DNA from: Haliotis rubra
Taxonomy: Eukaryota
DNA: 64,000 bases
Direction of reading: 5' to 3'
Assembly: GCF_003918875.1 (NCBI RefSeq)
Contig: NW_025766980.1
Coordinates: forward strand, 1,922,001 to 1,986,000
Position numbers and translations under genes: made by a program. The notes beneath the pieces were generated by a model. It was not told the DNA's origin and searched no databases. It saw only the letters and a list, made by a program, of their open reading frames with translations. Below are positions 22,701 to 43,700 of this stretch, one piece after another. The number at the start of each line of letters is the position of its first letter. The stretch's first letter is position 1.

Positions 22701-25700
22701 TCCTCCCAATCTGCTGAAAAGCAATCCCAGATTGGGAAGCAGCATGCCCCAATTCATGTACTTATGGATCAAGTTACTAATGTGATTACTTTGTAGAAGT
22801 GGCTGGTGTTTCACTGTTAACTTGACCTGTAGATAAAGAGGATGTAGAGATTTGATTTAATGCAATGATAAAATATCAGTGAATTTTAGAAAAGAATAAC
22901 TTAAAATAATCCCAGTTGTGAACAAAATAACAGTTGATTGCCAACTTACCTTACCAAAGGGATTCAGTTTGGGATCCAAGATAAAACCCTGTGCATACAT
23001 AACAAGCTTCCTGGGATGTGTTTTGAACCTACTTGTCCCTGTGTGCAGGTCCAGGAGAAAATCCGAAAGTGGATCATCGACTTTTACGCTGATCCCCCAG
23101 AAGGAGAAGAGAAGAAGATAACAGAACCAAAAGTAAGACCAGTTACCATGGTTACCATTCACACAAATCATATAATCTCCCAGATAATATTAAGTGTGTC
23201 TTACAAAGTAGAACCTGCTTACCTGTGGCGAATCATGCTAATGAGATCATAACTGATCATTAGGAGTTTTGACAGATTGCCTGAATTCCCAGGCATTTCT
23301 GCAGTTTCCACAACCAGGGTCCTGTTTCACACACCCAAACCTCTGGTCACGTAATCTTATCACTACTATATTAGCATTGTGTGTTTCAGGAGATATTCCA
23401 CACTGCTATAGAGGCTCTGGCAGAGCTGACAGCCAAGTCTGTTGAGCAGTTCCACAAGGCTGGGGAGCTGATTCTGCTGCAACAAGACACCGACACTCCC
23501 TACCAGAACCGCTCCAAGAGTCTTGCCAGGTACGAGTTGTTGGTTACAGTCCCAGTATTCTAACTACTAGTATATGATGTCAGTCTATGTGTCGCGGGTT
23601 CTGGTCTTGAGATGTCCCAAGGACAATAATTGATGAGACGGGGAATGTCGCTTAAGATATGCACCAGTTTATTGCCTGTGAAATATGAACATTACAACAT
23701 GAGAAAGATGATGTATGCGTCCGACATGGTCGGATGGTGACATGAAAGTCGTATATATCTTATATGAATACATCGGCAATAAACAATACAATTATAGATA
23801 TAAGATTGGTATATAATAGTTATGCTATAATTGTATAATTGATAAAATATATATGACGTCACGCATAAGCGTTTCGTCCGGGATATTTACAATTGATGTG
23901 ACGCCACGCATTAGCTTATCAGCCAAAATTATATACAACTGATGATTTAGTATACTGTAGATATAAAATCATAATTATTGATCATTCACACACTGTCTTA
24001 CATGCAATGCTAGTGCTTTAAGTTAGTAAGTGATCCACGCGAGAGAAAGTTTACAATACGCGGTCGCGATTAATTACTAACTTAAGATATATGTTATTAC
24101 TATGTTGATGACAATAATATATATACTAGCAATGATATAGATGTAGAAAGAATATATGTAGAGAGGGTGCTTACCTGTGAAATATGAACATTACAACATG
24201 AGAAAGATGTTGTATGCGTCCGACATGGTCGGATGGTGACATGAAAGTGTCACACGTCACAGGCATGAAACGCATCGAGATTTGGCGGTTAGCCAAATAC
24301 GGGTGGCACGCATAACTCTCTACATATAGCCAGTGGAGAAGCAGCCCTCTGTTGAAATAAAAGGAAATAGAAGGTTGTCGGCTACATATTCCCCCTTTGG
24401 AAAATGGTGTCCTCAACATTTATAGAACAAAGGACATGGTCAACAATGAGAGAGGAAAATGATCAAACAGGGATATTGATGAAAATATCCCCAACTGAAT
24501 TAGTTGCTTTTAATGACATCGCATGCTTTTGAAAGGAACACCAAATAATGGAAAACAAAACACCTGGTACTCCTATGAAAGTCAGAAGGTTTCAATGATC
24601 AGGAAATCATTGAAAGAAACTGACAAACCAACTGAACAAACCAACTAAACTATGTACAAGAACTTCAAACAAAAACTTCTTCCTCTTCCGCTTCGCTACT
24701 TAACGACGGCCCCGGAAGTTTGTCACCCACTGATCACTCTGCATCCAGGCTGGACAGGTTCTGAGTCGGGTAGGCCTCCCCGACTCCAGAGCCGCCCATC
24801 TGGGCAGGTGATGCAGGCTGAACGCTGATGACAGGAGGGGTTGCATCTTCTGGTTCCACAGCAGTACTTGAGGGCGGCGCTGAAGTCGACCTTTCCGAAC
24901 GGAAATACTGGCAGGGGATAACTGTATCAGCTGCTGGCTCTGTGGTCTCTGGCTGGCTTCCAGAAGATCCTGAGGGTGGACGAGAAGCATTAGCAGCACT
25001 TGGAATCAAATTCGTGGCTCTGGTTTGACTCCTCAGTCTTGGCAGCAGTATGATCTCCTCTTCATCCTGACTGTCTTCTTCGGATCTGTCTGAAGCTTGA
25101 AACTCCTTCACCAAGTGATACCCGATTCTTTGCTTCTTCTAGATTGGCGTCGTTCTGTCCTGGGCGGTCTTGTTGGAGGGAAACAGATTCCAGTGGCAGG
25201 AGCATGTTAGCGTGGAGAGTCTTCATTGGCCCCTGGCCACTCTCTTGCTTCAAAGTGTAGACGGAATGTCCTCGCTGGGTTGTTTCACAATGACATAGAC
25301 GTTTTTCCCCACTTGTTGGCAAGCTTGTTCCTTCCTGTAAGTCCGACAAGTCGCACCAGAACACGATCATTTGGTTGTAGAAAGGACTCTCTCACTTTCT
25401 TGTCGTAATGTTGTTTGTAGCGTTGTCCTGCCTTCCTAGATTCCTTGGAGGCTATGTTGTACGCAAACTGTAGCCGCTTCTTGAGGTTGTTAGCGTATTG
25501 AGTACAGGTAGCTTGTCCTTGTCCAAGGTCGAATCCAAGAAAGGCGTCCACTGGGAGTCGAGGGTGTCGTCCAAACATGAGGTAGAAGGGAGGTACTCTC
25601 GTGACTTGTGGCATTGTAGGAATGAACGAGAGCAGGTACATAAGTTTTCCAGTCACTCTTCTTCTCTTCATCCAGGGTACCCATCATGTTCATCAGTCTG

Positions 25701-28700
25701 GTTGAAACGCTCCGGCCATACCATTACCTTGAGGGTGATATGGCGCCGTTCTTGTCTTCTTTATCCCAGTAAGTTGGCAGAGTTCTCTGATGATGTTGCC
25801 CTCGAAGTTCCTCTCTTGGTCACTGTGGAGTTTAGCCGGAATCCATAATGTACTAGAAAATTGTCAAACAGTACTCTCGCTGTGGTCTTGGCTGATTGGT
25901 TACGAAGCTGGGATGGCAATAGCATCGCGAAAGTAAAATGATCCGTGATCACAAGGATATTCTCGTAGCCTCCTTTGGATTCTTCAAGCTTGAGATAGTC
26001 CAAACAGAAAAGTTCCATGGGCTGTGAAGTGTGGATGCTTATAAGTGATGCCGGCTTTCACAGTGGTTTTGCACTTGCGCCGGACACAATTACCACAGTT
26101 CTTAATGTACTTCTCAACATCCTCAGACATTCCAGTCCAGAAAAACCTTGATCTCACAAGATGGAGAGTTCTGTCGCTGGGCCCTGGTGTCCTGAGTTGT
26201 CATGGAGAGACTGAAGTATTTCCTGTATCTTGTTCCTTGGTAGAACTAGCTGATGTTCAATACCTTCGATGTTGTTAATTCGCCTGAACAAGATCCCATC
26301 CTTGAGAAACAACTTGTCCCTGTCCTGAAGTAATCTTCTCACTGTAGGATCCTCAAGTGACCGCTGACGCTGTGAGCTTAACTCCTTCCTTGATGAGATG
26401 GATTACACGCCCAAGATGTTGATCACTGAGTTGTTCCTTCTTCCAGGACAGTGATGTAGGGGTCAATGGAATTATGTCATCTGGGCAAACAACTTTTTCA
26501 TCACAAGATAAGCTTTCTGCAGCAATGCAGGAGGTGCAATGAACTTGGCAGATGGCCTTGATAGATTGGGGTTCGATATGAGACTCCTTGCTGTCCGAAA
26601 GTAGTCTGGCCTTCTTGACAATCCATCGGCATCCATGTTGGTGTTGCCTGCACGATAGGTAATGATGAAGTCGTGATGCTGAGAGAGCAGCGAGCCACCT
26701 GTGTCCAGTGGCATCAAGCTTGGCTGATGTCAAGACGTGGGTAAGTAAGAGGGTTGTTATCTGTCTTGACCTCGAACTTGTTTCCATACAGGTACTCATG
26801 AAACTTATCCGTAACGCCCATTTGAGTGCTAAAACTCAAGCTTGTGTGCAGGATAGTTCCTCTCGCTTCTTCCTGAGTCCTCTACTTGCATATGCATTAC
26901 TCTCATCTTGTCATCCTGCTTCTGGTAGAGAACTGCTCCCAGTCCATCAGCACTGGCATCAGTGTGGACCTCAAGGGGAGAGCGTTAATCAGCATACGCT
27001 AAGATTGGCGGTGACGTGAGGTGCTGGATCAGGACATCAAAAGCTTTTGTTGCTCATCATTCCACTTCCAGTTAGGATCAGGTTTAGAGCTTCGCCTCTT
27101 CTTCTTTGGTTGGTCTGTCAAGAGATCGTTGAGGGTCTTGCAATCCGAGAGAAATCCTTCACAAAACGCGGTAATACCCAGTGAAGCCTAGAAATCTTCT
27201 AACGTCATGCACATTGGTTGGTACGGGCCAATTCTTTAGTGCTGATACCTTCTCTGGATCCGCTCTCTATCCCGCTGCAAGATACAACATGCCCAAGGTA
27301 TGTTACGCTTATCCCTGAATAACTCACACTTGGAAGGCTTTAGCTTGAGGCCGCTTGTCTTTCAGTCGTTGGAATACTGCTTCAAGACGCTCCAAGTGTT
27401 CCTCAAATGTAGTTGAGAAGATAATGATGTCATCCAGGTAAATTAGACACTCCTTGAGGTTGAGATCTCCCATACATTTCTCCATTAGACGCTGGAAGGT
27501 GGCAGGTGCATTGGTCAGTCCGAACGGGTATTCGATTGCATTCATAAAATCCGAAAGTGGACCGGCTGAAAAGGCAGTCTTGTGCTTGTCTTCTTCTTTT
27601 AGTTCCACTTGCCAGTATCCTGAGCATAAGTCCAACTTAGAAAACATGGATGCTCCTGACAGACAATCTAAGGTTTCATCGATCCTGGGGATGGAATAAG
27701 CGTCCTTAACCGCCTGTTGGTTAATCCGGTGAAAATCCAGACATAGACGAGAGACTTGTCTTTCTTCCTCACCAGAACTATGTTAGACGAGAAAGGACTA
27801 CTTAGACTCACCTAATGGCTCCACATGTCAACATCTCATGAAGGTGTTCCCTGACTTCCTCAAACATTCCAGGTGGAATTCGCCGGGTGAGGTTCCTTGA
27901 AAGGAGTATCGTCAATGAGGTTGATCTCATGTTGCACAGCTGTGGTGTGTCCCAAATCAATGAGGCTCTTTGACATGATGCAGTTCCATCTTGAAAGCAT
28001 AGTCAAGGCTTCGGCCCCTCTGTCCATCGGGTGAGACAACTGTCCGAGAGGTCAAAGTCCACTGGTGAGGTATGAGTCTCCTGGATGGTGTTGGTCTTTG
28101 TTGGCAGAGCATCGACAGGTACTTCACTGAGCACTCGAACCCTCGTGAAGCTGACAGAGTCTGGTCTTGGCGGGTATACTGATGATCCTGGCTGACATGT
28201 TGCAAATGCTAACAGGAACCCTGGAGGAGTTACCTCGCTTACCTATTTCAACGAGTCTTGGGTAAACTGAGAGTCCTGTCCGAAGGTCAGAGTCCAAGTC
28301 ATGGTGTTCGGTGATAGCTGTGGCTCTTCCAGGCTGATGATGCACAAGTCCAGCGATGGTCATCATCTGGTTTGGTTGAAGGTGGATCGGCGTCTTGTTA
28401 GTAGATCTTACTTGTCCAGTGATTCCATTAGCTTGCGAACGTAATGCAGTAAGCCAAGAGGCTGGTATGGTGTTATCTACAGGTACCAAGAATCTCTCCA
28501 CAAGATCTATGACGTTGGTTCCGATCACTAGTGGTACTCGCCTGTTGTACTCTGTGTCTCTGGTGACTAGTAGAACAATGTCCAACTCCTTGTCAATGAA
28601 GGGGATGTAGATCTTGGCCTCCAAATATCCTGAGTATGGAAGGATGTTATCGCCTGCACCCATTACTTCGATCTCAAAGTCCTTGAGCTGTCGTAGTGGA

Positions 28701-31700
28701 AGATGAGTAAGGCATGACGCGTGGTATCCCTCAGATACAGTTGAAACCATAGATCCTGGATCAATCAAGGCTGGACAGTTGATTCTTCTCTATGTCGATA
28801 ACTGCCTCGTTGGCTTTGCCGACCATCCGGCCGATGTAAATCTGATAAGGGGCTAGTAGTTCCCTCAGCCTCAGCATGCCCCGCAGCAGTAGGCTGGATT
28901 AGTTTAAAGAATCCTTATCTTCCTTCGAGTATACTTGACCTCGACCACGTCCTCTTCTTCCTCTACCTCGAGTCCGTTGTGGCTGAAGGGAGTACTGTTG
29001 TTGCTGGGTCTCGTGGGTTTCCAATGCCTTCAGTCTGTCCAGAATCTGCTGGAGAAGATGACTGTCTGTAGACGGTTTCTTGGATGCCAATTCCAACTTC
29101 TCAAGCCTTTTGTAATGTCGGACAGCTGTCGAAAGCACTTTGATCCTGAGGAGAGGAAGTAGATCCTTCTAGTGGTTGTGAGAATCCTAATGTTTGAGGT
29201 TGGTGCTGACTACGACTGGGTCTTGGCTTGACAGGCTGGCTGTTGTTGATTTCCTGTTCAATCAGTCGAACGGTCTGTAGTAGTGTGTGAAATCCATCGA
29301 CGAAGTAAAAAGCATGACGTGTTGCATCCTTCAATGCCAGATTCCTCAACCCTGTCCAGAACCGATTCCGTAGCATGGCCTGTCTTGCTTGTGTATCCAA
29401 GTAAGACCCTCTATCGTACACACTCTGTAGGATGTCCTCAAGCCTGATTCCCCATGAAGCCACTGTCTCCTAATCCTTCTGAGTTGCCTGATGAAACTGT
29501 TGAAGAAGCTGTTCGGCCGTGATAATGGTTCCGTGAGGGCCCCCTCCAAACGCTGTAGAATATCTGTGACTGTAGCATATTCTCCTAGAGTAACTAACAC
29601 ACGAGCGGCATCTCCTCTGAGTGACTTCCCACAGCTTGCATAAGAGTTGAAGATGTAATGCTGTCATCCCTCATCAAGCAACGAATCTCAAACTTCCAGT
29701 TCTCGAAAGTTGTCTCCCCTTTCTGCACTGGCTCTTCACCTGAGAAGGCTGAAATCCTGAGTAGCGGCTGAAGTGTAGGCCATGGTGCAGGTGGATAGGT
29801 TGAAGGAGGGAAAGGAAACGATCCTGGTGTTGGGACATAAGATGGAAAACTAGGTGTGGAAAAGTTTCTTGAGTGTGGTGTAGAAGAAGTGGGTACGGAG
29901 CGAATGGTGTATTTCCCAGTCCCCTGAAGATAGGTCAACATCCTGGCTTCGTCCTCTTCGGAAATACCCTCGGACTTGATCTCCCAATCTTCACCACCTT
30001 GAGCCATGTTGTCCTCGATCCGTGATATAACGAGTGAAAGGTAAACACCAATGACCAGCAAAGAAAAGTATGAAGCGTTTACTGGTTTATACAACCACGA
30101 GTAGACCCAGCAGGGTAACTACGGTAGTAACATATAAACTATGCTGATACTATTACGCTAGGTAAAGTATCTGCTGTGCACAAACAGTAAACAAGGAATA
30201 GCAAACATGGAGGGAAGCATGAATGTATCTGTGATAGAATATGCTCTGATATTGCAGAGTGTATGATACTGTGTGCGGTATACCAAGGTGTGAAGCAAGA
30301 GCTAAACGCAAGCGCAACTCTAAGAGTTACTACGGTAATAAATGCTAAGGGTGTGCAGAGAGTATAAAACTTGCACAAGTGTGCAAATGCAAACTTGAGC
30401 ACCCAACAGAAACAAACTTACCCAAGGCAAAAAGCAAACAACACCATGAGAAAGAAACACAACGCCAGTTGATACGAAGCAAAGGGGAGGCAATCGCCTA
30501 TAGCATAGGGCTTAGGAAGCACTATAAGATAGGAAAATGGAAAAGACCCTAAGTATATTATCCTAACAGTTTATAAGATTAACAAACGCGACGAGATCGG
30601 GTAAGGACGCGAAATGTTAACGCGAGTGCATGGCTGTATAATTAGTGCAAATGAAAATAACTGACGATACACACAAGCAAACATAAAATGTAAACAATCA
30701 ACTATTGCACTAAGTCAAGTCAACACACTAATATAATACTTAAGCATGCATTGTCGCTTTTACAGACAATATAGGTAGCTTGATTATTTATAAATATAAC
30801 TAATATATCTAACAAATTGAATTAATCTAACCAATTACACTAATCTAACTAATTCAACTAGTCTAACTAATTAAACTAATCTAACTAATTACACCAATCT
30901 AACTAATTAAACTAATCTAACTAATATGATGAAGTCAAGTTATGTAAATATTGCACAGTTATGTGAAATTCAATGCATTCATGCAATATTATGGCATGTA
31001 GACAAATGTCAATAGTATGAATACAACTGATCCATGAAATCAATGCTATGAATATAGCAAATTCATGGATATAAATGGAATGTCACATATAAAATGCACT
31101 TTAGCAGCTGAATGTCTCCCAATGTCTCACTGATGATCACTGATATCACACGTTTATCACAGTCTTGTTTAGAGTGTCACATGTATATATGGATATCACA
31201 GATAAGGTGTAGAATATATAAGATGTAAAGTGTCTTATCACAGTCAAATAGAAGTTGATATATACACACACGAAATCACTGAGCGCAAATCTCACGTATC
31301 TGACGATCCTTGAAGATGACGTCCAGGTGAGCTGTACCGTGAGGGTGTCGTGGATGATATCGTGGGTTGTTCTTGGTTCTGCTTGGCACTGGTTGACGGC
31401 GATGTTATGATGAACCCCGTCTCTGTTCGGGCGCCAATTGTCGCAGGTTCTGGTCTTGAGATGTCCCAAGGACAATAATTGATGAGACGGGGAACGTCGC
31501 TTAAGATATGCACCAGTTTATTGCCTGTGAAATATGAACATTACAACATGAGAAAGATGTTGTATGCGTCCGACATGGTCGGATGGTGACATGAAAGTCG
31601 TATATATCTTATATGAATACATCGGCAATAAACAATACAATTATAGATATAAGATTGGTATATAATAGTTATGCTATAATTGTATAATTGATAAAATATA

Positions 31701-34700
31701 TATGACGTCACGCATAAGCGTTTCGTCCGGGATATTTACAATTGATGTGACGTCACGCATTAGCGATCAGTTAAAATTATATACAACTGATGATTTAGTA
31801 TACTGTAGATATAAAATCATAATTATTGATCATTCACACACTGTCTTACATGCAATGCTAGTGCTTTAAGCTAGTAAGTGATCCTTTAGAAAGTTTACAA
31901 ATAAGTGATCCAATTACTAACTTAAGATATATGTTATTACTATGTTGATGACAATAATATATATACTAGCAATGATATAGATGTAGAAAGAATATATGTA
32001 GAGAGGGTGCTTACCTGTGAAATATGAACATTACAACATGAGAAAGATGTTGTATGCGTCCGACATGGTCGGATGGTGACATGAAAGTGTCACACGTCAC
32101 AGGCATGAAACGCACGAGATTTGGCGGGTTAGCCAAATACGGGTGGCACGTACAACTCTCTACATATAGCCAGTGGAGAAGCAGCCCTCTGTTGAAATAA
32201 AAGGGAAATAGAAGGCTGTCGGCGACATATTCCCCCCCTTTGGAAAATGGTGTCCTCAACATTTATAGAACAAAGGACATGGTCAACAATGAGAGAGGAA
32301 AATGACCAAACAGGGATATTGATGAAAATATCCCCAACTGAATTAGTTAAGCTTTTAATGACACGTATGCTTTTGAAAGGAACACCAAATAACGGAAAAC
32401 AAAACACCTGGTACTCCTATGAAAGCTCGTAAGGTTTCAATGATCAGGAAATCATTGAAAGAAACTGACAAACCAACTGAACAAACCAACTAAACTATGT
32501 ACAAGAACTTCAAACAAAAAAAACTTCTTCCTCTTCCGGCGCTTCTGTTACGAACGACGGCCCCGAAGTTTGTCACCCACTGATCACTCTGCATCCAGGC
32601 TGGACGGGTTCTGAGTCGGGTAGGCCTCCCCGACTCCAGAGCGTCCATCTGGGCAGGTGATGCAGGTTGAACGCTGATGACAGGAGGGGTTGCATCTTCT
32701 GGTTCCACAGCAGTACTTGAGGGCGGCGTTGAAGTCGACCTTTCCGGAACGGAAATACTGGCAGGGGGGATAACTGTATCAGCTGCTGGCTCTGTGGTCT
32801 CTGGCTGGCTTCCAGAAGATCCTGAGGGTGGACGAGAAGCATTAGCAGCACTTGGAATCAAATTCGTGGCTCTGGTTTGACTCCTCAGTCTGGGCAGCAG
32901 TATGATCTCCTCTTCATCCTGACTGTCTTCTTCGGATCTGTCTGAAGCTTGAAACTCCTTCACTCGAAGTGATACCGATTTCTTGCTTCTTCTAGATTGG
33001 CGTCGTTCTGTCCTGGGCGTGTCTTGTTGGAGGGAAACAGATTCCAGTGGCAGGAGCATGTTGCGGTGGAGAGTCTTCATTGGCCCCTGGCCACTCTCTT
33101 GCTTCAAAGTGTAGACGGGAATGTCCTCGTTGGGTTGTTTCACAATGACATAGACGTTTTTCCCCCACTTGTTGGCAAGCTTGTTCCTTCCTGTAAGTCC
33201 GACAAGTCGCACCAGAACACGATCATTTGGTTGTAGAAAGGACTCTCTCACTTTCTTGTCGTAATGTTGTTTGTAGCGTTGTCCTGCCTTCCTAGATTCC
33301 TTGGAGGCTATGTTGTACGCAAACTGTAGCCGCTTCTTGAGGTTGTTAGCGTATTGAGTACAGGTAGCTTGTCCTTGTCCAAGGTCGAATCCAAGAAAGG
33401 CGTCCACTGGGAGTCGAGGGTGTCGTCCAAACATGAGGTAGAAGGGAGGTACTCTCGTGACTTGTGGCATTGTAGGAATGAACGAGAGCAGGTACATAAG
33501 TTTTCCAGTCACTCTTCTTCTCTTCATCCAGGGTACCCATCATGTTCATCAGTCTGGTTGAAACGTTCCGTCATACCATTACCTTGAGGGTGATATGGCG
33601 TCGTTCTTGTCTTCTTTATCCCAGTAAGTTGGCAGAGTTCTCTGATGATGTTGCCCTCGAAGTTCCTCTCTTGGTCACTGTGGAGTTTAGCCGGGAATCC
33701 ATAATGTACTAGAAAATTGTCAAACAGTACTCTCGCTGTGGTCTTGGCTGATTGGTTACGAGTTGGGATGGCAATAGCATCGCGAGTAAAATGATCCGTG
33801 ATCACAAGGATATTCTCGTAGCCTCCTTTGGATTCTTCAAGCTTGAGATAGTCCAAACAGAAAAGTTCCATGGGCTGTGAAGTGTGGATGCTTATAAGTG
33901 ATGCGGCTTTCACAGTGGTTTTGCACTTGCGTCGGACACAATTACCACAGTTCTTAATGTACTTCTCAACATCCTCAGACATTCCAGTCCAGAAAAACCT
34001 TGATCTCACAAGATGGAGAGTTCTGTCGCGTCCCTGGTGTCCTGAGTTGTCATGGAGAGACTGAAGTATTTCCTGTATCTTGTTCCTTGGTAGAACTAGC
34101 TGATGTTCAATACCTTCGATGTTGTTAATTCGTCTGAACAAGATCCCATCCTTGAGAAACAACTTGTCCCTGTCCTGAAGTAATCTTCTCACTGTAGGAT
34201 CCTCAAGTGACCGCTGACGTGCTGTGAGCTTAACTCCTTCCTTGATGAGATGGATTACACGTCCAAGATGTTGATCACTGAGTTGTTCCTTCTTCCAGGA
34301 CAGTGATGTAGGGGTCAATGGAATTATGTCATCTGGGCAAACAACTTTTTCATCACAAGATAAGCTTTCTGCAGCAATGCAGGAGGTGCAATGAACTTGG
34401 CAGATGGCCTTGATAGATTGGGGTTCGATATGAGACTCCTTGCTGTCCGAGTAGTCTGGCCTTCTTGACAATCCATCGGCATCCATGTTGGTGTTGCCTG
34501 CACGATAGGTAATGATGAAGTCGTATGCTGAGAGAGCAGCGAGCCACCTGTGTCCAGTGGCATCAAGCTTGGCTGATGTCAAGACGTAGGTAAGAGGGTT
34601 GTTATCTGTCTTGACCTCGAACTTGTTTCCATACAGGTACTCATGAAACTTATCCGTAACGGCCCATTTGAGTGCTAAAAACTCAAGCTTGTGTGCAGGA

Positions 34701-37700
34701 TAGTTCCTCTCGCTCTTCCTGAGTCCTCTACTTGCATATGCGATTACTCTCATCTTGTCATCCTGCTTCTGGTAGAGAACTGCTCCCAGTCCATCAGCAC
34801 TGGCATCAGTGTGGACCTCTCCGAAAGGGAGAGCGTAATCAGCATACGCTAAGATTGGCGGTGACGTGAGGTGCTGGATCAGGACATCAAAAGCTTTTTG
34901 TTGCTCATCATTCCACTTCCAGTTAGGATCAGGTTTAGAGCTTCGTCTCTTCTTCTTTGGTTGGTCTGTCAAGAGATCGTTGAGGGGTCTTGCAATCCGA
35001 GAGAAATCCTTCACAAAACGGCGGTAATACCCAGTGAAGCCTAGAAATCTTCTAACGTCATGCACATTGGTTGGTACGGGCCAATTCTTTGAGTGCTGAT
35101 ACCTTCTCTGGATCCGTCTCTATCCTGTTGCAAGATACAACATGCCCAAGGTATGTTCGCGATCCCTGAATAACTCACACTTGGAAGGCTTTAGCTTGAG
35201 GCCGTTGTCTTTCAGTCGTTGGAATACTGCTTCAAGACGCTCCAAGTGTTCCTCAAATGTAGTTGAGAAGATAATGATGTCATCCAGGTAAATTAGACAC
35301 TCCTTGAGGTTGAGATCTCCCATACATTTCTCCATTAGACGCTGGAAGGTGGCAGGTGCATTGGTCAGTCCGAACGGCATTGATTGCATTCATAAAATCC
35401 GAGTGGACCGGCTGAAAAGGCAGTCTTGTGCTTGTCTTCTTCTTTTTAGTTCCACTTGCCAGTATCCTGAGCATAAGTCCAACTTAGAAAACATGGATGC
35501 TCCTGACAGACAATCTAAGGTTTCATCGATCCTGGGGATGGAATAAAGCGTCCTTAACCGTCTGTTGGTTAATCCGGCGAAAATCCAGACATAGATGCAG
35601 AGACTTGTCTTCTTCCTCACCAGAACTATGTTAGGCGAGAAAGGACTACGAGACTCACGAATGGCTCCACATGTCAACATCTCATGAAGGTGTTCCCTGA
35701 CTTCCTCAAACATTCCAGGTGGAATTCGTCGGTGAGGTTCCTTGAAAGGAGTATCGTCAATGAGGTTGATCTCATGTTGCACAGCTGTGGTGTGTCCCAA
35801 ATCAATGAGGCTCTTTGACATGATGCAGTTCCATCTTGAAAGCATAGTCAAGGCTTCGTCCCTCTGTCCATCGGTGAGACAACTGTCCGAGAGGTCAAAG
35901 TCCACTGGTGAGGTATGAGTCTCCTGGATGGTGTTGGTCTTTGTTGGCAGAGCATCGACAGGTACTTCACTGAGCACTCGAACCTCGTGAAGCTGACAGA
36001 GTCTGGTCTTGGCGGGTATACTGATGATCCTGGCTGACATGTTGCAAATGCGAACAGGAACCCTGGAGGAGTTACCTCGCTTACCTATTTCAACGAGTCT
36101 TGGGCAAACTGAGAGTCCTGTCCGAAGGTCAGAGTCCAAGTCATGGTGTTCGGTGATAGCTGTGGCTCTTCCAGGCTGATGATGCACAAGTCCAGCGATG
36201 GTCATCATCTGGTTTGGTTGAAGGTGGATCGGCGTCTTGTTAGTAGATCTTACTTGTCCAGTGATTCCATTAGCTTGCGAACGTAATGCAGTAAGCCAAG
36301 AGGCTGGTATGGTGTTATCTACAGGTACCAAGAATCTCTCCACAAGATCTATGGCGTTGGTTCCGATCACTAGTGGTACTTTCGCCTGTTGTACTCTGTG
36401 TCTCTGGTGACTAGTAGAACAATGTCCAACTCCTTGTCAATGAAGGGATGTAGATCTTGGCCTCCAAATATCCTGAGTATGGAAGGATGTTATAAGCCTG
36501 CACCCATTACTTCGATCTCAAAGTCCTTGAGCTGTCGTAGTGGAAGATGAGTAAGGCATGGCGCAGCGTGGTATCCCTCAGATACAGTTGAAACCATAGA
36601 TCCTGGATCAATCAAGGCTGGACAGTTGATTCTCTCTATGTCGATAACTGCCTCGTTGGCTTTGCCGACCATCCGTCGATGTAAATCTGATAAGGGGCTA
36701 GTAGTTCCCTCAGCCTCAGCATGCCCCGCAGCAGTAGGCTGGATTAGTTTAAAGAATCCTTATCTTCCTTCGAGTATACTTGACCTCGACCACGTCCTCT
36801 TCTTCCTCTACCTCGAGTCCGTTGTGGCTGAAGGGAGTACTGTTGTTGCTGGGTCTCGTGGGTTTCCAATGCCTTCAGTCTGTCCAGAATCTGCTGGAGA
36901 AGATGACTGTCTGTAGGCGGTTTCTTGGATGCCAATTCCAACTTCTCAAGCCTTTTTGTAATGTCGGACAGCTGTCGAGGCACTTTGATCCTGAGGAGAG
37001 GGAAGTAGATCCTTCTAGTGGTTGTGAGAATCCTAATGTTTGAGGTTGGTGCTGACTACTGACTGGGTCTTGGCTTGACAGGCTGGCTGTTGTTGATTTC
37101 CTGTTCAATCAGTCGAGCGGTCTGTAGTAGTGTGTGGAAATCCATCGGCGAGTAAAAGCATGGCGTGTTGCATCCTTCAATGCCAGATTCCTCAACCCTG
37201 TCCAGAACGATTCCGTAGCATGGCCTGTCTTGCTTGTGTATCCAAGTAAGACCCTCTCGTCACACACACTCTGTAGGATGTCCTCAAGCCTGATTCCCCA
37301 TGAAGCCACTGTCTCCGAATCCTTCTGAGTTGCCTGATGAAACTGTTGAAGAAGCTGTTAGGCCGTGATAATGGTTCCGTGGGGGCCCTCCAAGCGCTGT
37401 AGAATATCTGTGACTGTAGCATATTCTCCTAGAGTAACTAACACACGAGCGGCATCTCCTCTGAGTGACTTCCTCACAGCTTGCATAAGAGTTGAAGATG
37501 TAATGCTGTCATCCCTCATCAAACAACGAATCTCAAACTTCCAGTTCTCGAAAGTTGTCTCCCCTTTCTGCACCTGGCTCTTCACCTGAAGGCTGAAATC
37601 CTGAGTAAGCGGCTGAAGTGTGGAGGCCATGGTGCAGGTGGATAGGTTGAAGGAGGGGAAAGGAAGCGATCCTGGTGTTGGGACATAAGATGGAAAACTA

Positions 37701-40700
37701 AGTGGAAAAGTTTCTTGAGTGTGGTGTAGAAGAAGTGGGTGCGGGCCGAATGGTGTATTTCCCAGTCCCTGAAGATAGGTCAACATCCTGGCCGTCCTCT
37801 TCGGAAATACCCTCGGACTTGATCTCCCAATCTTCACCACCTTGAGCCATGTTGTCCTCGATCCGTTGATATAACGAGTGAAAGGTAAACACCAATGACC
37901 AGCAAAGAAAAGTATGAAGCGTTTACTGGTTTATACAACCACGAAAGTAGACCCAGCAGGGTAACTTCACGGTAGTAACATATAAACTATGCTGATACTA
38001 TTACGCTAGGTAAAGTATCTGCTGTGCAACAAACAGTAAACAAGGAATAGCAAACATGGAGGGAAGCATGAATGTATCTGTGATAGAATATGCTCTGATA
38101 TTGCAGAGTGTATGATACTGTGCGTGGTATACCAAGGTGTGAAGCAAGAGCTAAGCAAAGCGCAACTCTAAGAGTTACTACGGTAATAAATGCTAAGGGT
38201 GTGCAGAGAGTATAAAACTTGCACAAGTGTGCAAATGCAAACTTGAGCACCCAACAGAAACAAACTTACCCAAGGCAAAAAGCAAACAACACCATGAGAA
38301 AGAAACACAACGCCAGTTGATCTGAAGGAAACAAGGGGAGGCAATCGCCTATAGCATAGGGCGAGGGAAGCACTATAAGATAGGGGAAAATGGAAAAGAC
38401 CCTAAGTATATTATCCTAACAGTTTATAAGATTAACAAGCGCTGACGCAGACGCGGAGGCGGACGCGGAAATGTTAACGCGAGTGCATGGCTGTATAATT
38501 AGTGCAAATGAAAATAACTGACGCATACACACAAGCAAACATAAAATGTAAACAATCAACTATTGCACTAAGTCAACACACTAATATAATACTTAAGTAT
38601 GCATTGTCGTTTTTACAGACAATATAGGTAGCTTGATTATTTATAAATATAACTAATATATCTAACAAATTGAATTAATCTAACCAATTACACTAATCTA
38701 ACTAATTCAACTAGTCTAACTAATTAAACTAATCTAACTAATTACACCAATCTAACTAATTAAACTAATCTAACTAATATGATGAAGTCAAGTTATGTAA
38801 ATATTGCACAGTTATGTGAAATTCAATGCATTCATGCAATATTATGGCATGTAGACAAATGTCAATAGTATGAATGCAACTGATCCATGAAATCAATGCT
38901 ATGAATATAGCAAATTCATGGATATAAATGGAATGTCACATATAAAATGCACTTTAGCAGCTGAATGTCTCCCAATGTCTCACTGATGATCACTGATATC
39001 ACACGTTTATCACAGTCTTGTTTAGAGTGTCACATGTATATATGGATATCACAGATAAGGTGTAGAATATATAAGATGTAAAGTGTCTTATCACAGTCAA
39101 ATAGAAGTTGATATATACACACACGAAATCACTGAGCGCAAATCTCACGTATCTGACGATCCTTGAAGATGACGTCCAGGTGAGCTGTACCGTGAGGGTG
39201 TCGTGATGATATCGTGGGGTTGTTCTTGGTTCGTTGGCACTGGTTGACGGCGATGTTATGATGAACCCCGTCCCTGTTCGGGCGCCAATTGTCGCAGGTT
39301 CTGGTCTTGAGATGTCCCAAGGACAATAATTGATGAGACGGGGAACGTCGCTTAAGATATGCACCAGTTTATTGCCTGTGAAATATGAACATTACAACAT
39401 GAGAAAGATGTTGTATGCGTCCGACATGGTCGGATGGTGACATGAAAGTCGTATATATCTTATATGAATACATCGGCAATAAACAATACAATTATAGATA
39501 TAAGATTGGTATATAATAGTTATGCTATAATTGTATATTTTTCCTTATCCTGACTCATGCTCTTTTGCTTGTCCCCTTCCTCTTGCGAACATAGTGGAAC
39601 ACTTGTATCTCCTTAATTGAAGCTCCCTTCAATGTAAAATCACTAATTGGTACTCACCCACGAGTTACCTCCCCTGCCGTAAGCGCGGGAACAGGTGTCG
39701 CCACCCTCTGGCCTCATGCTTCACTCTCTCCTTCTTCGCCCAGTGAGCAGGATGTGAGAGCGCCTGTGTCTCCTTACACACTATATCCTTTGGTTTTCTT
39801 AGTTAGTTACCTTTTATAGTTTACTATAAAGGTATAGCTAGTATCCTTCAGTTATTTGCATTAATAATTAATCATTATTTCTACTGTTTATTCCATTGAG
39901 TTAAGTGATTGTTCAGCTAGTTTTACATTGATGAAAAACTGTACTATTTGTAGATTACGTTTTCCGCTCATGCGGATCATGTGGTATGCCCTAGTTGTAC
40001 TCGCCTTGTCGCGTTTGACTCACGTTGCAGTTACTGCATAAATTTAACCAATTCTGCCTTTGATAAATACCATCTTTGCGTCTTGAGGCGTGTTGCAGAT
40101 AGGTCACGCAAACTAGGTGTAGACATGGCCGATCGTCCGGATTGCCCATCCAGTCAACTGCTGTCGAGTGATCCCCTCCCGTCTGGTGTTCTGCTTGAGA
40201 CCCCATCGGTAGAGGGGCGTGGGATGCAGTCCGTCACCTCTAAGAAGCGACCGGCCTCTCCAGACATCCAGTCATCGCAGACAAAGTCCAGAGGGCCTCA
40301 GCGTCTTCTCAGCGCCAGACTTAGTGCCCCAGGGCAGCGTCTTCCTCCAAAGGGAAATCACGAAGTCATCGAGAACTTTCTCAGGCGAGATCGTTCCAGC
40401 AGCAGAATTGGGCCTCTCGATGACCAGCCTATCATCATACCCGACATATGCATACAAGAAGCGACCAGTGACAGCGACAGTGGCGTCAGCAGAGATCAAC
40501 AAGCAGCCTGATGCCTCTACACTGATGTCAGGCGAGATCGCTGAGGGCCCCACAGCTAACACAGCAGAAAGGGCACCATCTACTACGTCGCCAGATCATC
40601 CCAAGCGATCTTATGAAACAGATCATGATTATGATGGAAGGCCACTATAGACTGGAGAAGCAGCCATCCCAGGGTCGAGGAGCCGAAGGCTCCAACGTGA

Positions 40701-43700
40701 CAGCACCCCAGGGCACCATCTGTCAACGTAGCAGCCACGACAATGCAGCCTTCGAAGGAAGTCACAGACCACCTCGACGAAGGACCCAGATGTACAGCCT
40801 TCGCGAAGGCCTTACGTAAAGCGGGGAAGAATCATCACCTCCTTCCCGGTCATACTCAGATATGGAATCTGATCACCCAGACCACGCATGAAGCCTTGGC
40901 GAAGGTCATATCATCATTCCCAGGACCGGACATCTGAAGCTTCCGGCGAAGTTGTGAAGGACACCTGAACCCAGATCGTCTTCATCTAAAAAGATCAGCA
41001 AGGGACTACACAAGAGCTTCGGCGAAGCTATCAGTCCCCTCATAGGTCGCCAAGAAGGTCAACCTATCGATATAGATCACCAAGGCGATCACCTCGCCCG
41101 ATCACCACGTCGATCACCTCACAGGTCTGCACATAAGCCTACAACTAGATCTCCACAAGCGTCAAGCGATATAGAGATAGAGCCACACAGCCCTACATCA
41201 GAAGAGCAACAACCTCTTATCTATGATGATGGAATGGAAGATGATGGAGGAATTATTTTCTCAGATGCAGAGATAAGATATTGGATGGTCAATAATCTAG
41301 ATCTCTCATCACCTTCCAAGAGTGGCAATAAAGAAGCAGACTTATCTGATGAAAGAAGATGGCGCAGATGCTATTACACTACCCCAATCGACCCGATTAG
41401 GCGGTACCTCAGAACCTAGATACAGCATTTAACAAAGCCACAAAGGTTCAGGCATACATCTGCCAAATTTCAAGCGCCAAGAAGTTCTCCACGCATAATA
41501 TGGAACCCTTCTTCAAAAGCCAAGACATCGATGAGAACTATAAGCTGATCTCCGATGCCAAGAACAAGTACTACAAGATTGATGATGGAAATTGGTTCAG
41601 ATAGAAACCATGGCGAGGCGTATGTTCTTCGGTCTAAATAGATCTAGAACAATAAATGAGACACTTATCTCCAGATTTGAACCACGACCTCTGAAGATGA
41701 CAGAATGATTTACTTTCGGCCCTACTGATGCAAAAAGAAGGACCAGCAGTTTTTAACAGATCATCTGGCGTCTGTCTCAGCAGCACTGACCTTAGCTTCG
41801 TCGTCAAGGCCTCCTAGCTTCCTGCAACTGGGGTGAGAACTTTACAGCTCCACTATATACAGCCCGTGGTCTTCCCCATCCATATTTGTGGAGGAATAGA
41901 CACAGTCTCCAAAGAAGTCACCAAGGATTCTAGAGAGTCCTGATGATTAAATCGATGGACCACGCTAGCCAGTGTCATTCGACAGACTTCACAAAGATAC
42001 TCAGGGAGATCTAAATTCACGGGCCTACAAAGAGCTAGAGACAGGAAGATTGCCAGTTCCAGGGGAAGAGATTCTTTTAAAATTAAGCCCATATGGCAAC
42101 TATAGAGGAGGGTCAGGGCGAGGCAGGACACCCAGAGGTTCCCGCAACTATAAACGCTGAAAGACAGGTTCGAACGACTGGAGTCTTCCACCCCAGCCGT
42201 TCCAGTACAACCGTCACAAGTGGGTGGGCGTCTTCAACTACACTGGGAAAACTGGGGAATACTTCAAGACACCTATGTCTCCAACATTCTTCAGCGGTTT
42301 AGAGTATCCCACTACAGGCCAAGCCTCCACTAACAGTCAACCCTCACAAGTTCGAGGTAGAGGCACAACAACTACTAAAGTTAAGAGAGGCGGTTACATT
42401 ACTCCTAACCAAGCAGGCCATAGAAGTAATAGAGCAAGGAAACATCGAACCAGGTTTCTACTCCCCAGTTTTCCTAGTACCCAAGAAGAACTCCAAGGAG
42501 AAATACAGACTCATTTACAACATGAGCTTCTTCAACAAGACTTACTTAAAACACACCACCCAGGTTCACTATGATACATCTACCGCTAGCTTCTGGCAGA
42601 TGATTAGCCCCATGGACTACATGGGCAGTATAGATCTACAAGATGCTTATCTGCACATCCCAATACATCCTTCAATCAGGAAATACCTTCGGTTTTACGG
42701 CTAAGGCGGGTTACATTACCAGTGGAAAGTACTCCCATTGAATAGCATCAGCCCCATGGTTATTCACGAGGATAACGAAACCGATTGTTACCTATCTACA
42801 TCGTCAAGGGCTACGCGAGAGTGCGTTCTTCCTCGACGACGGGATACAAGTAGATCAAGATCCACAGCATCTCAAACTACAGTTAAACTACATCATAAAG
42901 CTACTAACACAGCTGGGATGGTTAGTAAACTTACACAAAGTCGGACCTAGTACCATCGCCAAGATCTGCAATTCCTAGGAATCCGATTTATCACCAATCT
43001 CAACCGTATAGTCGTACCAGAAGACCGTTGGCTCAAGATCCAACAGATCATTCCACCAGCTCTACTGTCACCGCTACCACTTCTTCACAATGGCAGAGCT
43101 TACTAGGTCTTCTAACATCAGCCCAAGACTTGACAGTCATAGGCAGATTACAGTTACGTCCGTTACAGGTCTTCGTCAATACACATCTCGGCGACCTACA
43201 ACCATTCAGTCTACCGATACATCTCAGACCTCATCTATTATGGTGGACAAAGAAATCCGAATGTCTCGAGAGGGATTTGTTTAGCAGAGCAGGAATTCAA
43301 GACCCATCTATATGTAGATCAGCGATGGCTCCAAGGTTGGGGAGCTCATCTCTCCAACCGACGACATCAGGGTTATGGACTCAGCTAGAAAGCAAACTCC
43401 ACATAAGCGCATTAGAGATGAAAGCTGTAATCAGCGCCATAAGACATTGGAGCAACATTCTACAGAATGCGCACCTGATGATACATACCGACAACTCGAC
43501 AGTGGCGTTTATGTGAACAGACAAGGCTCAACGAGATCGCCGAACCTTTTGAATTTAACCTTTCAACTGTTCGAATTAATCCAAGATCTAAATCTACATG
43601 TCAAAGCATGCCACATTCCCCGAGCCAGGAATATACTAGCAGGCGCACTCTCGGCCACATCTACCGTCACCCGACAGAATGGATGCTCAATACAGAGATA

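What the first reader, a model, noticed from the sequence alone, without database searches (positions are those of the whole stretch)
23668..24248. LTR contains an intron-like segment whose 3' end is a 74-nt copy of the sequence before its donor
Seen: on the element (minus) strand every LTR reads U3 - repeat (24248-24175) ending TTTCACAG|GTAAGC (consensus donor) - ~425 nt AT-rich - same repeat (23749-23676) ending TTTCACAG|GC AATAAA. This defines a 499-nt GT-AG segment (24174 to 23676), conserved in LTR 2 (32014 to 31525) and LTR 3 (46257 to 39376). The repeat carries a pyrimidine tract and a TCCGAC-CAT-GTCGGA hairpin. Splicing would create a junction (repeat + AATAAA) essentially identical to the unspliced 3' end. 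Inference: (a) a spliced 5' end could still strand-transfer onto an unspliced 3' end and regenerate the intron at each cycle, solving how a retroelement keeps an intron in its LTR; or (b) splicing in the 3' LTR removes the CRE/TATA-like segment and yields promoter-less short-LTR progeny, a self-limiting switch. I do not recall this architecture being described, but could not search for it.
Basis: partly seen in the sequence, partly recalled or inferred. Interest (0 to 1): 0.85.

Follow-up and report, generated by a model that had tools for sequence, protein, structure and literature searches.

The report
Repeat-flanked promoter segment inside LTR
Each long terminal repeat of this abalone jumping gene has two co-evolving copies of a 74-base leader around its promoter-like core; the layout looks like an intron and often collapses into short dead repeats, but splicing could not be tested.

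Summary
All three LTRs of a tandem Gypsy-like element (LTR-int-LTR-int-LTR, TSD CATA) read U3a, 74-nt repeat, CAG|GTAAGC, 425 nt of AT-rich CRE/TATA sequence, the same repeat, CAG|GCAATAAA.

New here:
- The layout is old. At least two further LTR families in this genome (~70% identical) keep it with a very different repeat sequence.
- The two repeat copies evolve in concert: 0-1 differences within young LTRs, at least 18 between families.
- ~290-bp LTRs lacking exactly the segment arose at least 3-7 times. Some are elements with two short LTRs plus a TSD, and none spread.
- The GTAAG block sits inside a very stable conserved stem (z -7 to -8) that pairs it with U3a.

None of this proves splicing. 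Deleting between 74-nt repeats gives the same product by RT copy-choice, and one sublineage kept repeat-2-specific changes at loci on two contigs, so repeat 2 is not rewritten every cycle. No RNA data could be obtained.

Best reading (about 0.5): a duplicated R-leader flanking the promoter, homogenised and often deleted by reverse transcription. The self-regenerating intron stays open at about 0.25.

The parts
23590..46470 (-). Whole insertion: tandem LTR-int-LTR-int-LTR Gypsy-like element with 4-bp TSD CATA (46474-46471 and 23589-23586)
   Evidence: internal copies 99-100% identical; RT domain RVT_1 E=1.4e-19 in ORF 27324-27647
23590..24386 (-). LTR1 (3'-most), 797 nt, TGTAGC...GCGACA; preceded by the polypurine tract AAAGGGGGAATA (24398-24387)
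31439..32228 (-). LTR2 (middle); followed 2 nt downstream by the primer-binding site TGGCGCCCGAACAG... (31436-31419)
39290..39537 (-). LTR3, 3' part (end of X, rep2, AATAAA, U5), followed by the PBS
45921..46470 (-). LTR3, 5' part (U3a, rep1, GTAAGC, most of X)
24249..24386 (-). U3a: 138 nt upstream of rep1. It holds three blocks that pair with the sequence just after rep1 (TATATGTAGAGAG 24328-24316; GTGC; GCCTGTGA 24264-24257) and a CRE-like TGACGTGTGAC
24175..24248 (-). rep1: upstream copy of the 74-nt leader, with two hairpins (TCCGAC/GTCGGA 24233-24219; ACAACAT/ATGTTGT)
24153..24180 (-). Conserved block TCACAG|GTAAGCACCCTCTCTACATATA. It matches the 5' splice-site consensus and is at the same time the 3' arm of the three-part stem with U3a
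23750..24174 (-). X: 425-nt AT-rich segment with CRE TGACGTCA (23861-23854) abutting TATATAT, a second CRE-like site, TATAAG about 27 nt before rep2, and TACTAAC and GTAAGA motifs conserved between families
23676..23749 (-). rep2: downstream copy, ending CACAG|GC. Probably the start of R
23668..23673 (-). AATAAA poly(A) signal, 2 nt after rep2. In this family it pairs with GTTTATTGCC in X (10-bp inverted repeat enclosing rep2, seen in LTR2 at 31516-31525 / 31624-31633)
39538..45920 (.). 6.4-kb element with ~100-nt inverted ends inserted into X of LTR3. Not part of the feature; it shows LTR3 is disrupted

Best explanation
The 499-nt segment is the promoter-bearing core of an old, conserved 'duplicated-leader' LTR, and is not shown to be an intron. 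rep2 plus the AATAAA region is most likely R: a TATA-like box sits ~27 nt upstream of rep2, AATAAA lies ~77 nt into it, and it has two 5' hairpins, as in retroviral R regions. rep1 is a second copy of that leader lying in U3, locked inside a very stable stem-loop domain formed with U3a. Reverse transcriptase copy-choice or strand transfer between the two copies does two things. (i) It occasionally homogenises them, giving concerted evolution. (ii) It often deletes X plus one copy precisely, giving ~290-bp LTRs that lack the CRE/TATA core and never spread. Shown here: the anatomy, its conservation, the concerted evolution, the recurrent dead-end short LTRs, and the structure. Inferred: the TSS position, the RT mechanism, and the idea that the stem shields rep1 and the GTAAG site. 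The GTAAG site may also be used as a 5' splice site at some level; that is untested.
For: More than 40 LTRs keep the layout. Within an LTR, rep1 and rep2 differ by 0-1 positions in young copies, against at least 18 differences between families. Lineage-specific variants occur in both copies: the TGTAA deletion, GCATAC/GCACAC/G--TGC, and the GGATAC variant of L021. Short LTRs are interleaved with long ones on the tree, with a long-LTR outgroup: 7 changes by parsimony, at least 3 forced by starred branches, and 0% of bootstrap trees with one origin. L031 and L043 have two short LTRs plus TSDs, so the loss predates integration. Every short lineage is a single insertion or a segmental copy of one. 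RT deletes direct repeats precisely and at high frequency (PMC3187697). The internal deletions of L031 have no GT-AG ends, so that copy carries non-splicing deletions (RT errors or later genomic loss). Sublineage L060/L064/L065/L066, on contigs C2135 and C2247, shares rep2-private changes (TTAACAG|TCAATAAA; CATGTTAC in three of the four), so rep2 was not overwritten by rep1 each cycle. The conserved block after rep1 is almost fully base-paired with U3a, with 2 compensatory pairs between families, MFE z-scores of -7.0 and -8.0 and a perfect 13-bp inverted repeat.
Against: A near-consensus CAG|GTAAGC lies exactly at the repeat end, and ...CAG| exactly at the end of the second copy. Both are kept in all families, with only an A/G change at +3 (GTGAG), and this reading leaves that as coincidence or as a by-product of the stem. 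The unpaired AA of GTAAG is conserved too. A costly repeat (frequent dead progeny) has been kept through ~30% LTR divergence without an identified function for rep1. Homogenisation by copy-choice needs triplicated intermediates (rep-X-rep-X-rep), and none was seen among 75 hairpin-core hits. The TSS is only inferred from motifs.
Confidence: 0.5

Rival explanations
1. Self-regenerating LTR intron. Some transcripts start at the left edge of rep1 (TSS1), so rep1 is exon 1 and X+rep2 is a GT-AG intron. Splicing gives a 5' end (rep+AATAAA region+U5) identical to the unspliced 3' end, so minus-strand strong-stop DNA lands on rep2 and the long LTR is rebuilt. X is lost only if both ends are spliced. 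The U3a arms that pair with the donor exist only in 3'-LTR RNA, so they would mask the 3' copy of the donor and give the needed 5'/3' asymmetry.
For: It explains both repeat boundaries (TSS, donor) and why the copies match. Consensus donor and CAG acceptor are conserved in at least three families, with A/G at +3. All three U3a pairing blocks lie upstream of the homogenised tract. In L058 and L067 the identity of rep2 with rep1 extends a further ~17 nt into U3a-type sequence, as if recopied from a longer 5' end. Short LTRs on both ends of an element are as predicted for doubly spliced RNA. No triplicated intermediates were seen. Spliced LTR-contained transcripts are reported in maize (preprint 10.64898/2026.05.08.723830).
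Against: No RNA evidence. CRE and TATA motifs lie inside the 'intron', and there is no TATA ~30 nt before rep1. rep2-private variants persisted at loci on two contigs, and there is shared rep1/rep2 discordance in L025/L029, so rewriting is at most occasional. The polypyrimidine tract is weak, and the branch-site match is good only in family 2. The donor block conservation has a structural explanation.
Confidence: 0.25
2. 3'-LTR splicing only. Transcription starts near rep2, so the donor is seen only in the U3 part of the 3' end. Occasional splicing there removes X. Because rep1 then abuts the AATAAA region, the spliced RNA still has a functional R and yields promoter-less short-LTR progeny: a leak or self-limiting switch, damped by the stem that masks the donor.
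For: Short-LTR insertions make up roughly a quarter to a third of family-1 insertion events counted (about 9-10 against about 22), and none spread. The donor is paired in a stable stem. Promoter motifs in X fit a TSS near rep2.
Against: RT repeat deletion gives the same product without splicing. A purely harmful donor could be lost by one mutation, yet it is conserved. The youngest burst (L001-L010 clade) has almost no short derivatives. No RNA data.
Confidence: 0.15
3. A one-off duplication or foreign insertion with no function: a chance template-switch duplication, a MITE, or another element's LTR inserted in the LTR.
For: Direct repeats in LTRs are common products of RT errors. A 13-bp inverted repeat flanks rep1.
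Against: The layout is kept in families only ~70% identical, with co-varying repeat copies and compensatory stem changes. X does not start TG or end CA, has no TSD, and its only matches are in LTRs of this or the related family, or fragments whose context I did not check.
Confidence: 0.05

Closest known systems
Direct-repeat deletion and enhancer-repeat copy-number change during retroviral reverse transcription (SNV, MLV and HIV vectors; self-inactivating 'E-' vectors)
   Same: One repeat plus the intervening sequence is lost precisely in one cycle, both LTRs of the progeny carry the loss, and the progeny are promoter-less (review PMC3187697).
   Different: There the repeats are engineered or are tandem U3 enhancers and are unstable. 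Here a non-tandem 74-nt repeat around the promoter has been kept and co-evolved through ~30% LTR divergence.
Retroviral R regions (HIV-1 TAR/poly(A) hairpins) and retroviruses with the major splice donor inside R (HTLV-1/BLV, foamy viruses): from my own knowledge, not checked here
   Same: A structured ~100-nt leader with AATAAA ~75 nt from its start; a 5' splice site within the LTR; RNA structure or U3-only sequences giving 5'/3' asymmetry.
   Different: In those viruses the acceptor lies in the internal region, not in the same LTR, and R is not duplicated inside U3.
Spliced LTR-contained transcripts of maize LTR retrotransposons (bioRxiv 10.64898/2026.05.08.723830)
   Same: Introns wholly inside LTRs, with canonical junctions; the authors say this is the first such evidence to their knowledge.
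   Different: Those are shown by long-read RNA. They have long introns (mean 1.3 kb) and often three exons; the passages I read mention no exon copy at the intron's 3' end and no link to strand transfer. Here there is no RNA evidence.
Introns of Ogre (legumes) and EVADE (Arabidopsis) LTR retrotransposons
   Same: Functional spliceosomal introns retained by LTR elements (cited in PMC12786077).
   Different: Those introns are in the internal region and make subgenomic RNAs; they are kept because unspliced RNA is the replication template.
Intron gain by tandem duplication of an AGGT-containing segment (Rogers model): from my own knowledge
   Same: The 3' end of the intron is a copy of the exon sequence before the donor, and splicing restores the unduplicated sequence.
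   Different: Here the sequence after the donor (GTAAGC...) is not a clear copy of that after the acceptor (GCAATA...; 5 of 10 identical), and the duplication lies in a retroelement LTR, where RT acts on it every cycle.

Membership tests
U2-type GT-AG spliceosomal intron | 5' splice site matching MAG|GTRAGT | tested here: met
   CAG|GTAAGC in 19 of 23 full-length family-1 LTRs tabulated. The motif with flank gave 88 genome hits against 2 in the reversed control, and the only variant at +3 is GTGAG.
U2-type GT-AG spliceosomal intron | 3' splice site YAG preceded by a polypyrimidine tract and a branch site 18-40 nt upstream | tested here: inconclusive
   CAG| is present in all families. The last 19 nt are only about half pyrimidine. 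CTAAT about 20 nt upstream in family 2, but CTCAT/TGTAAT in family 1 (read by eye).
U2-type GT-AG spliceosomal intron | Transcribed from an upstream start site and removed from RNA | not testable with these tools
   No run on record as RNA holds the stretch. The four runs laid are contigs that break at the repeat, with even depth over X. The LTR ORF that would end ...FHR or ...FHRQ has no database hit.
Ty3/Gypsy-type LTR retrotransposon | LTRs with TG...CA ends and short inverted termini, 4-5-bp TSD, PBS and PPT next to the LTRs | tested here: met
   TGTCGC...GCGACA. TSDs are CATA here and CGAT, TCTA, CCTA, CGAC in relatives. PBS TGGCGCCCGAACAG 2 nt after the LTR; PPT AAAGGGGG.
Ty3/Gypsy-type LTR retrotransposon | pol order PR-RT-RH-IN | tested here: inconclusive
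   RVT_1 E=1.4e-19. The downstream ORFs look RNase H- and integrase-like by eye, but Pfam does not recognise the frameshifted fragments.
Products of RT direct-repeat deletion | Exact loss of one repeat plus the spacer, present on both LTRs of an insertion with a TSD, arising recurrently | tested here: met
   L031 (TSD CGAT) and L043 (TSD TCTA) have two short LTRs. There are at least 3-7 independent origins. The same product is expected from splicing, so this does not exclude it.
Retroviral-type R region (for rep2 + AATAAA region) | Starts at the TSS ~30 nt after a TATA box and contains the poly(A) signal ~20 nt before its end | tested here: inconclusive
   TATAAG lies ~27 nt before rep2 in family 1, and an AT-rich TAATTAATAT ~25-35 nt before it in family 2. 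AATAAA lies 2 nt after rep2. The TSS and poly(A) site were not measured.

The most novel reading that the evidence does not exclude
The LTR carries a self-regenerating intron. Exon 1 (rep1) is duplicated at the intron's 3' end, so a spliced 5' leader is identical to the unspliced 3' R. First-strand transfer then rebuilds the intron-containing LTR unless both ends are spliced. A U3a stem present only in 3'-end RNA masks the 3' copy of the donor. Other first-reader notes on this genome describe similar layouts with 42- and 52-bp repeats (untested), so this could be a general strategy of abalone LTR elements.
Probability: 0.25. Interest if true: 0.85.

Novelty: new variant of a known kind. Interest (0 to 1): 0.6.

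Why it matters
LTR elements are thought to shed introns and direct repeats quickly, because they replicate through RNA and an error-prone, jumping polymerase. Here a costly repeat around the promoter has been kept, co-evolving, through deep family divergence, next to a canonical splice-site pair and inside a strongly conserved RNA or ssDNA fold. Two outcomes are possible. It may be a new way for a retroelement to keep an intron in its LTR and to tell its 5' from its 3' end. Or it may be a natural self-inactivating design that turns a sizeable share of progeny into inert short-LTR copies. Either would add to how retroelement copy number and LTR evolution are understood, and it gives a concrete, cheap RNA experiment in abalone.

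Tried and rejected
- RNA evidence. Two run searches found no run on record as RNA. Laying four runs gave only contigs that break at the 74-nt repeat, with even depth over X, so they look like DNA. A few low-depth 'skips' in X11 are not GT-AG and are probably short or divergent DNA copies. No support either way.
- Transcript contigs through proteins. The ORF nearest the 3' LTR and the LTR ORF ending at the donor had no database hits. The protease-region ORF only gave Haliotis rubra genome proteins and one 1.98-kb ENA contig.
- Telling splicing from RT deletion in the short LTRs. This is impossible in principle when the repeats are identical. Diagnostic rep1/rep2 differences in the nearest long relatives were too few and were blurred by later mutations.
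- Other splice footprints in short-LTR elements. The three internal deletions of L031 and the one in L043 have no GT-AG ends.
- Triplicated LTRs as copy-choice intermediates. None among 75 hairpin-core hits.
- X as a foreign mobile unit, a MITE or another element's LTR. Rejected.
- 'Short LTR is ancestral'. Rejected, because the outgroup family is long and the short forms are polyphyletic.
- Pfam on integrase-like fragments. No hit.
Seven single hairpin-core hits (C358, C2412, C493, C2182, C224, C1258, C2240) therefore remain unclassified.
Full report
**1. What is there**

On the minus strand the window holds one insertion, 46470 to 23590, flanked by a 4-bp target-site duplication CATA. It has the form LTR3-internal-LTR2-internal-LTR1.

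- The two internal copies are 99-100% identical.
- The LTR is 797 nt and reads TGT(A/C)GC...GCGACA. A polypurine tract lies just before it, and a primer-binding site TGGCGCCCGAACAG lies 2 nt after it.
- pol is frameshifted. One ORF hits RVT_1 at E=1.4e-19. The integrase-like pieces are not recognised by Pfam, so 'Gypsy' is likely but only partly tested.
The genome is therefore blacklip abalone.
- LTR3 is split by a 6.4-kb element at 39538-45920.

**2. The observation**

It is exact.

- rep1 (24248-24175) and rep2 (23749-23676) are 74 nt and identical at 73 of 74 positions.
- rep1 is followed by GTAAGC. rep2 ends CACAG and is followed by GC AATAAA. The segment between is 499 nt including rep2.

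One caveat applies. With a 74-nt flanking repeat, the deleted interval can be drawn at 75 equivalent positions, so bare GT-AG means little. What counts is the extended CAG|GTAAGC falling exactly at the repeat edge.

**3. Genome-wide anatomy**

- The LTR has at least 21 near-full-length copies at 91-100% identity and older ones down to 78%. All have both repeats, the GTAAG-type site and X.
- A second family, only ~70% identical, has the same layout: U3a, a 78-nt repeat, GTAAGCACCCTCTCTA, X, the same repeat, GCAATAAAC, U5, and the same PBS where it is visible. Examples are L049-L059, with sublineages L060-L066, L067 and L070, and a more distant L071.
- The repeat sequence of that family is very different and includes a different first hairpin.
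- The 20-nt donor-block motif occurs 88 times in the genome, against 2 for the reversed control. The only change at +3 is A to G.

**4. Concerted evolution**

- Within young LTRs, rep1 and rep2 differ at 0-1 positions. Between families the same repeat differs at 18 or more positions.
- Lineage-specific changes appear in both copies of the same LTR: a 5-nt TGTAA deletion, GCATAC/GCACAC/G--TGC, and the GGATAC variant of L021. L004 is a hybrid.
- Homogenisation is not obligatory each cycle. L060, L064, L065 and L066, on contigs C2135 and C2247, share rep2-private changes (TTAACAG|TCAATAAA, and CATGTTAC in three of the four) that rep1 lacks. L025 and L029 share another discordance.
- In L058 and L067 the identity with rep1 extends a further ~17 nt to the left. 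In typical copies that stretch survives only as a diverged homologue.

**5. Short LTRs**

- LTRs of ~285-300 bp that lack exactly X plus one repeat are common: L031a/b, L032/33, L038-L046.
- L031 (TSD CGAT) and L043 (TSD TCTA) are elements with two short LTRs. The loss therefore happened before integration, in RNA or during reverse transcription.
- On a tree of the shared parts, rooted with the long-LTR second family, short LTRs are scattered among long ones. This needs 7 changes by parsimony, and at least 3 are forced by well-supported branches. No bootstrap tree had a single origin.
- The long form is therefore ancestral, and the short forms are recurrent derivatives.
- Every short lineage is one insertion or a segmental copy of one, so short-LTR elements did not spread. 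That fits X being needed for expression.
- A rough count for family 1 gives about 22 long against 9-10 short insertion events. Seven hits remain unclassified.

**6. Why this does not prove splicing**

- RT copy-choice deletes direct repeats precisely and often. A review cites 41% per cycle for a 110-bp repeat, and notes that LTR enhancer repeats vary in copy number (PMC3187697). Its product here is identical to the spliced product.
- Misaligned copy-choice followed by contraction also homogenises repeats. However, no rep-X-rep-X-rep LTR was seen among 75 hairpin-core hits.
- The other deletions in L031 have no GT-AG ends.
- The best promoter motifs lie inside the proposed intron: two CRE sites, TATATAT, and TATAAG ~27 nt before rep2. 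AATAAA ~77 nt into rep2 plus the following bases looks like an ordinary R region. The main transcript of the 5' LTR may therefore never contain the donor (motif reading only, TSS not measured).

**7. A new structural fact**

RNAalifold on 12 diverse copies, and single-sequence folds of both families, give the same domain.

- U3a TATATGTAGAGAG pairs with CTCTCTACATATA, which starts 9 nt after the GT. This is a perfect 13-bp inverted repeat in family 1 and 11 bp with one G-U in family 2. Two pairs are changed on both sides between families.
- GUGC pairs with GCAC.
- (G/A)CCUGUGA pairs with UCACAGGU, which is the splice-site junction itself.
- MFE is -64 and -70 kcal/mol, with z-scores of -7.0 and -8.0.
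- rep2 is enclosed more weakly (z -2.3 and -2.7). In family 1 the closing helix is GTTTATTGCC/GGCAATAAAC.

This stem cuts both ways. It explains why the block after rep1 is so conserved without invoking splicing. Equally, a donor paired with sequence that exists only in 3'-end RNA is what a 5'/3'-asymmetric intron would need.

**8. Weighing**

For the intron:
- both repeat edges get a reason (TSS, donor);
- the consensus sites are kept in all families;
- the unpaired AA of GTAAG is conserved;
- a costly repeat is retained;
- there are no triplications.

Against the intron:
- there is no RNA evidence;
- the promoter motifs sit inside it;
- the acceptor tract is weak;
- rep2-private variants persist;
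- a sufficient RT-only mechanism is known.

I put the RT-maintained duplicated-leader reading at about 0.5. The self-regenerating intron gets about 0.25, 3'-LTR splicing only about 0.15, and a functionless accident about 0.05.

**9. Novelty**

Full-text searches found no description of an LTR with a duplicated leader flanking its promoter, or of an LTR intron bounded by an exon copy. A 2026 maize preprint claims the first evidence of introns within LTRs, from long reads; the passages I read describe no such layout. Three other unchecked first-reader notes on this genome describe similar layouts with 42- and 52-bp repeats. This scan has therefore flagged the theme on other DNA of the same genome.

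**10. Limits**

- The align tool printed a two-LTR consensus on its own; it was not used.
- Chance estimates for the splice-site coincidence are my own arithmetic.
- Statements about HIV, HTLV and foamy virus LTRs and the Rogers model rest on my own knowledge.

Noticed in passing
window 39538-45920: A 6.4-kb element with ~100-nt inverted terminal repeats is inserted in the X segment of LTR3. I only confirmed its boundaries and inverted ends.
   Followed up: partly
window 23590-46470; also G000:C2125:163450-180066 and L039: Tandem LTR-int-LTR-int-LTR arrays recur in this family. C2125 has three LTRs ~7.9 kb apart, and the short LTR in L039 has a PPT before it and a PBS after it. This points to unequal LTR recombination or concatemer integration.
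   Followed up: no
window 20302-21092: A tandem array of ~13-15 copies of a 52-nt unit (90-97% identical), just outside the element.
   Followed up: no
window 49146-49450: Three tandem copies of a ~101-nt unit (88-100% identical).
   Followed up: no
X segment, e.g. window 24060-24000 (LTR1): Blocks conserved between the two LTR families inside X: ATCACTTACTAACTTAA(A)GCAC, which contains the canonical branch-site heptamer TACTAAC, followed by a second donor-like GTAAGACAGTGTGTGAA. X could hold further splice signals or a small internal exon. Not tested.
   Followed up: no
L032 4007-4298 and L033 4024-4316; L041/L042; L045/L046; L013/L016: Several LTR copies with identical flanks lie tens of kb apart on one contig or on two contigs. 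These are segmental duplications, or uncollapsed haplotypes in the assembly, and they inflate copy counts.
   Followed up: partly
L068, family-2 LTR: An ~80-nt deletion at the 3' end of X, bounded by a 9-nt microhomology (ATTCAATTG) that includes the first bases of rep2. This is an example of microhomology-mediated copy-choice in the same region.
   Followed up: partly
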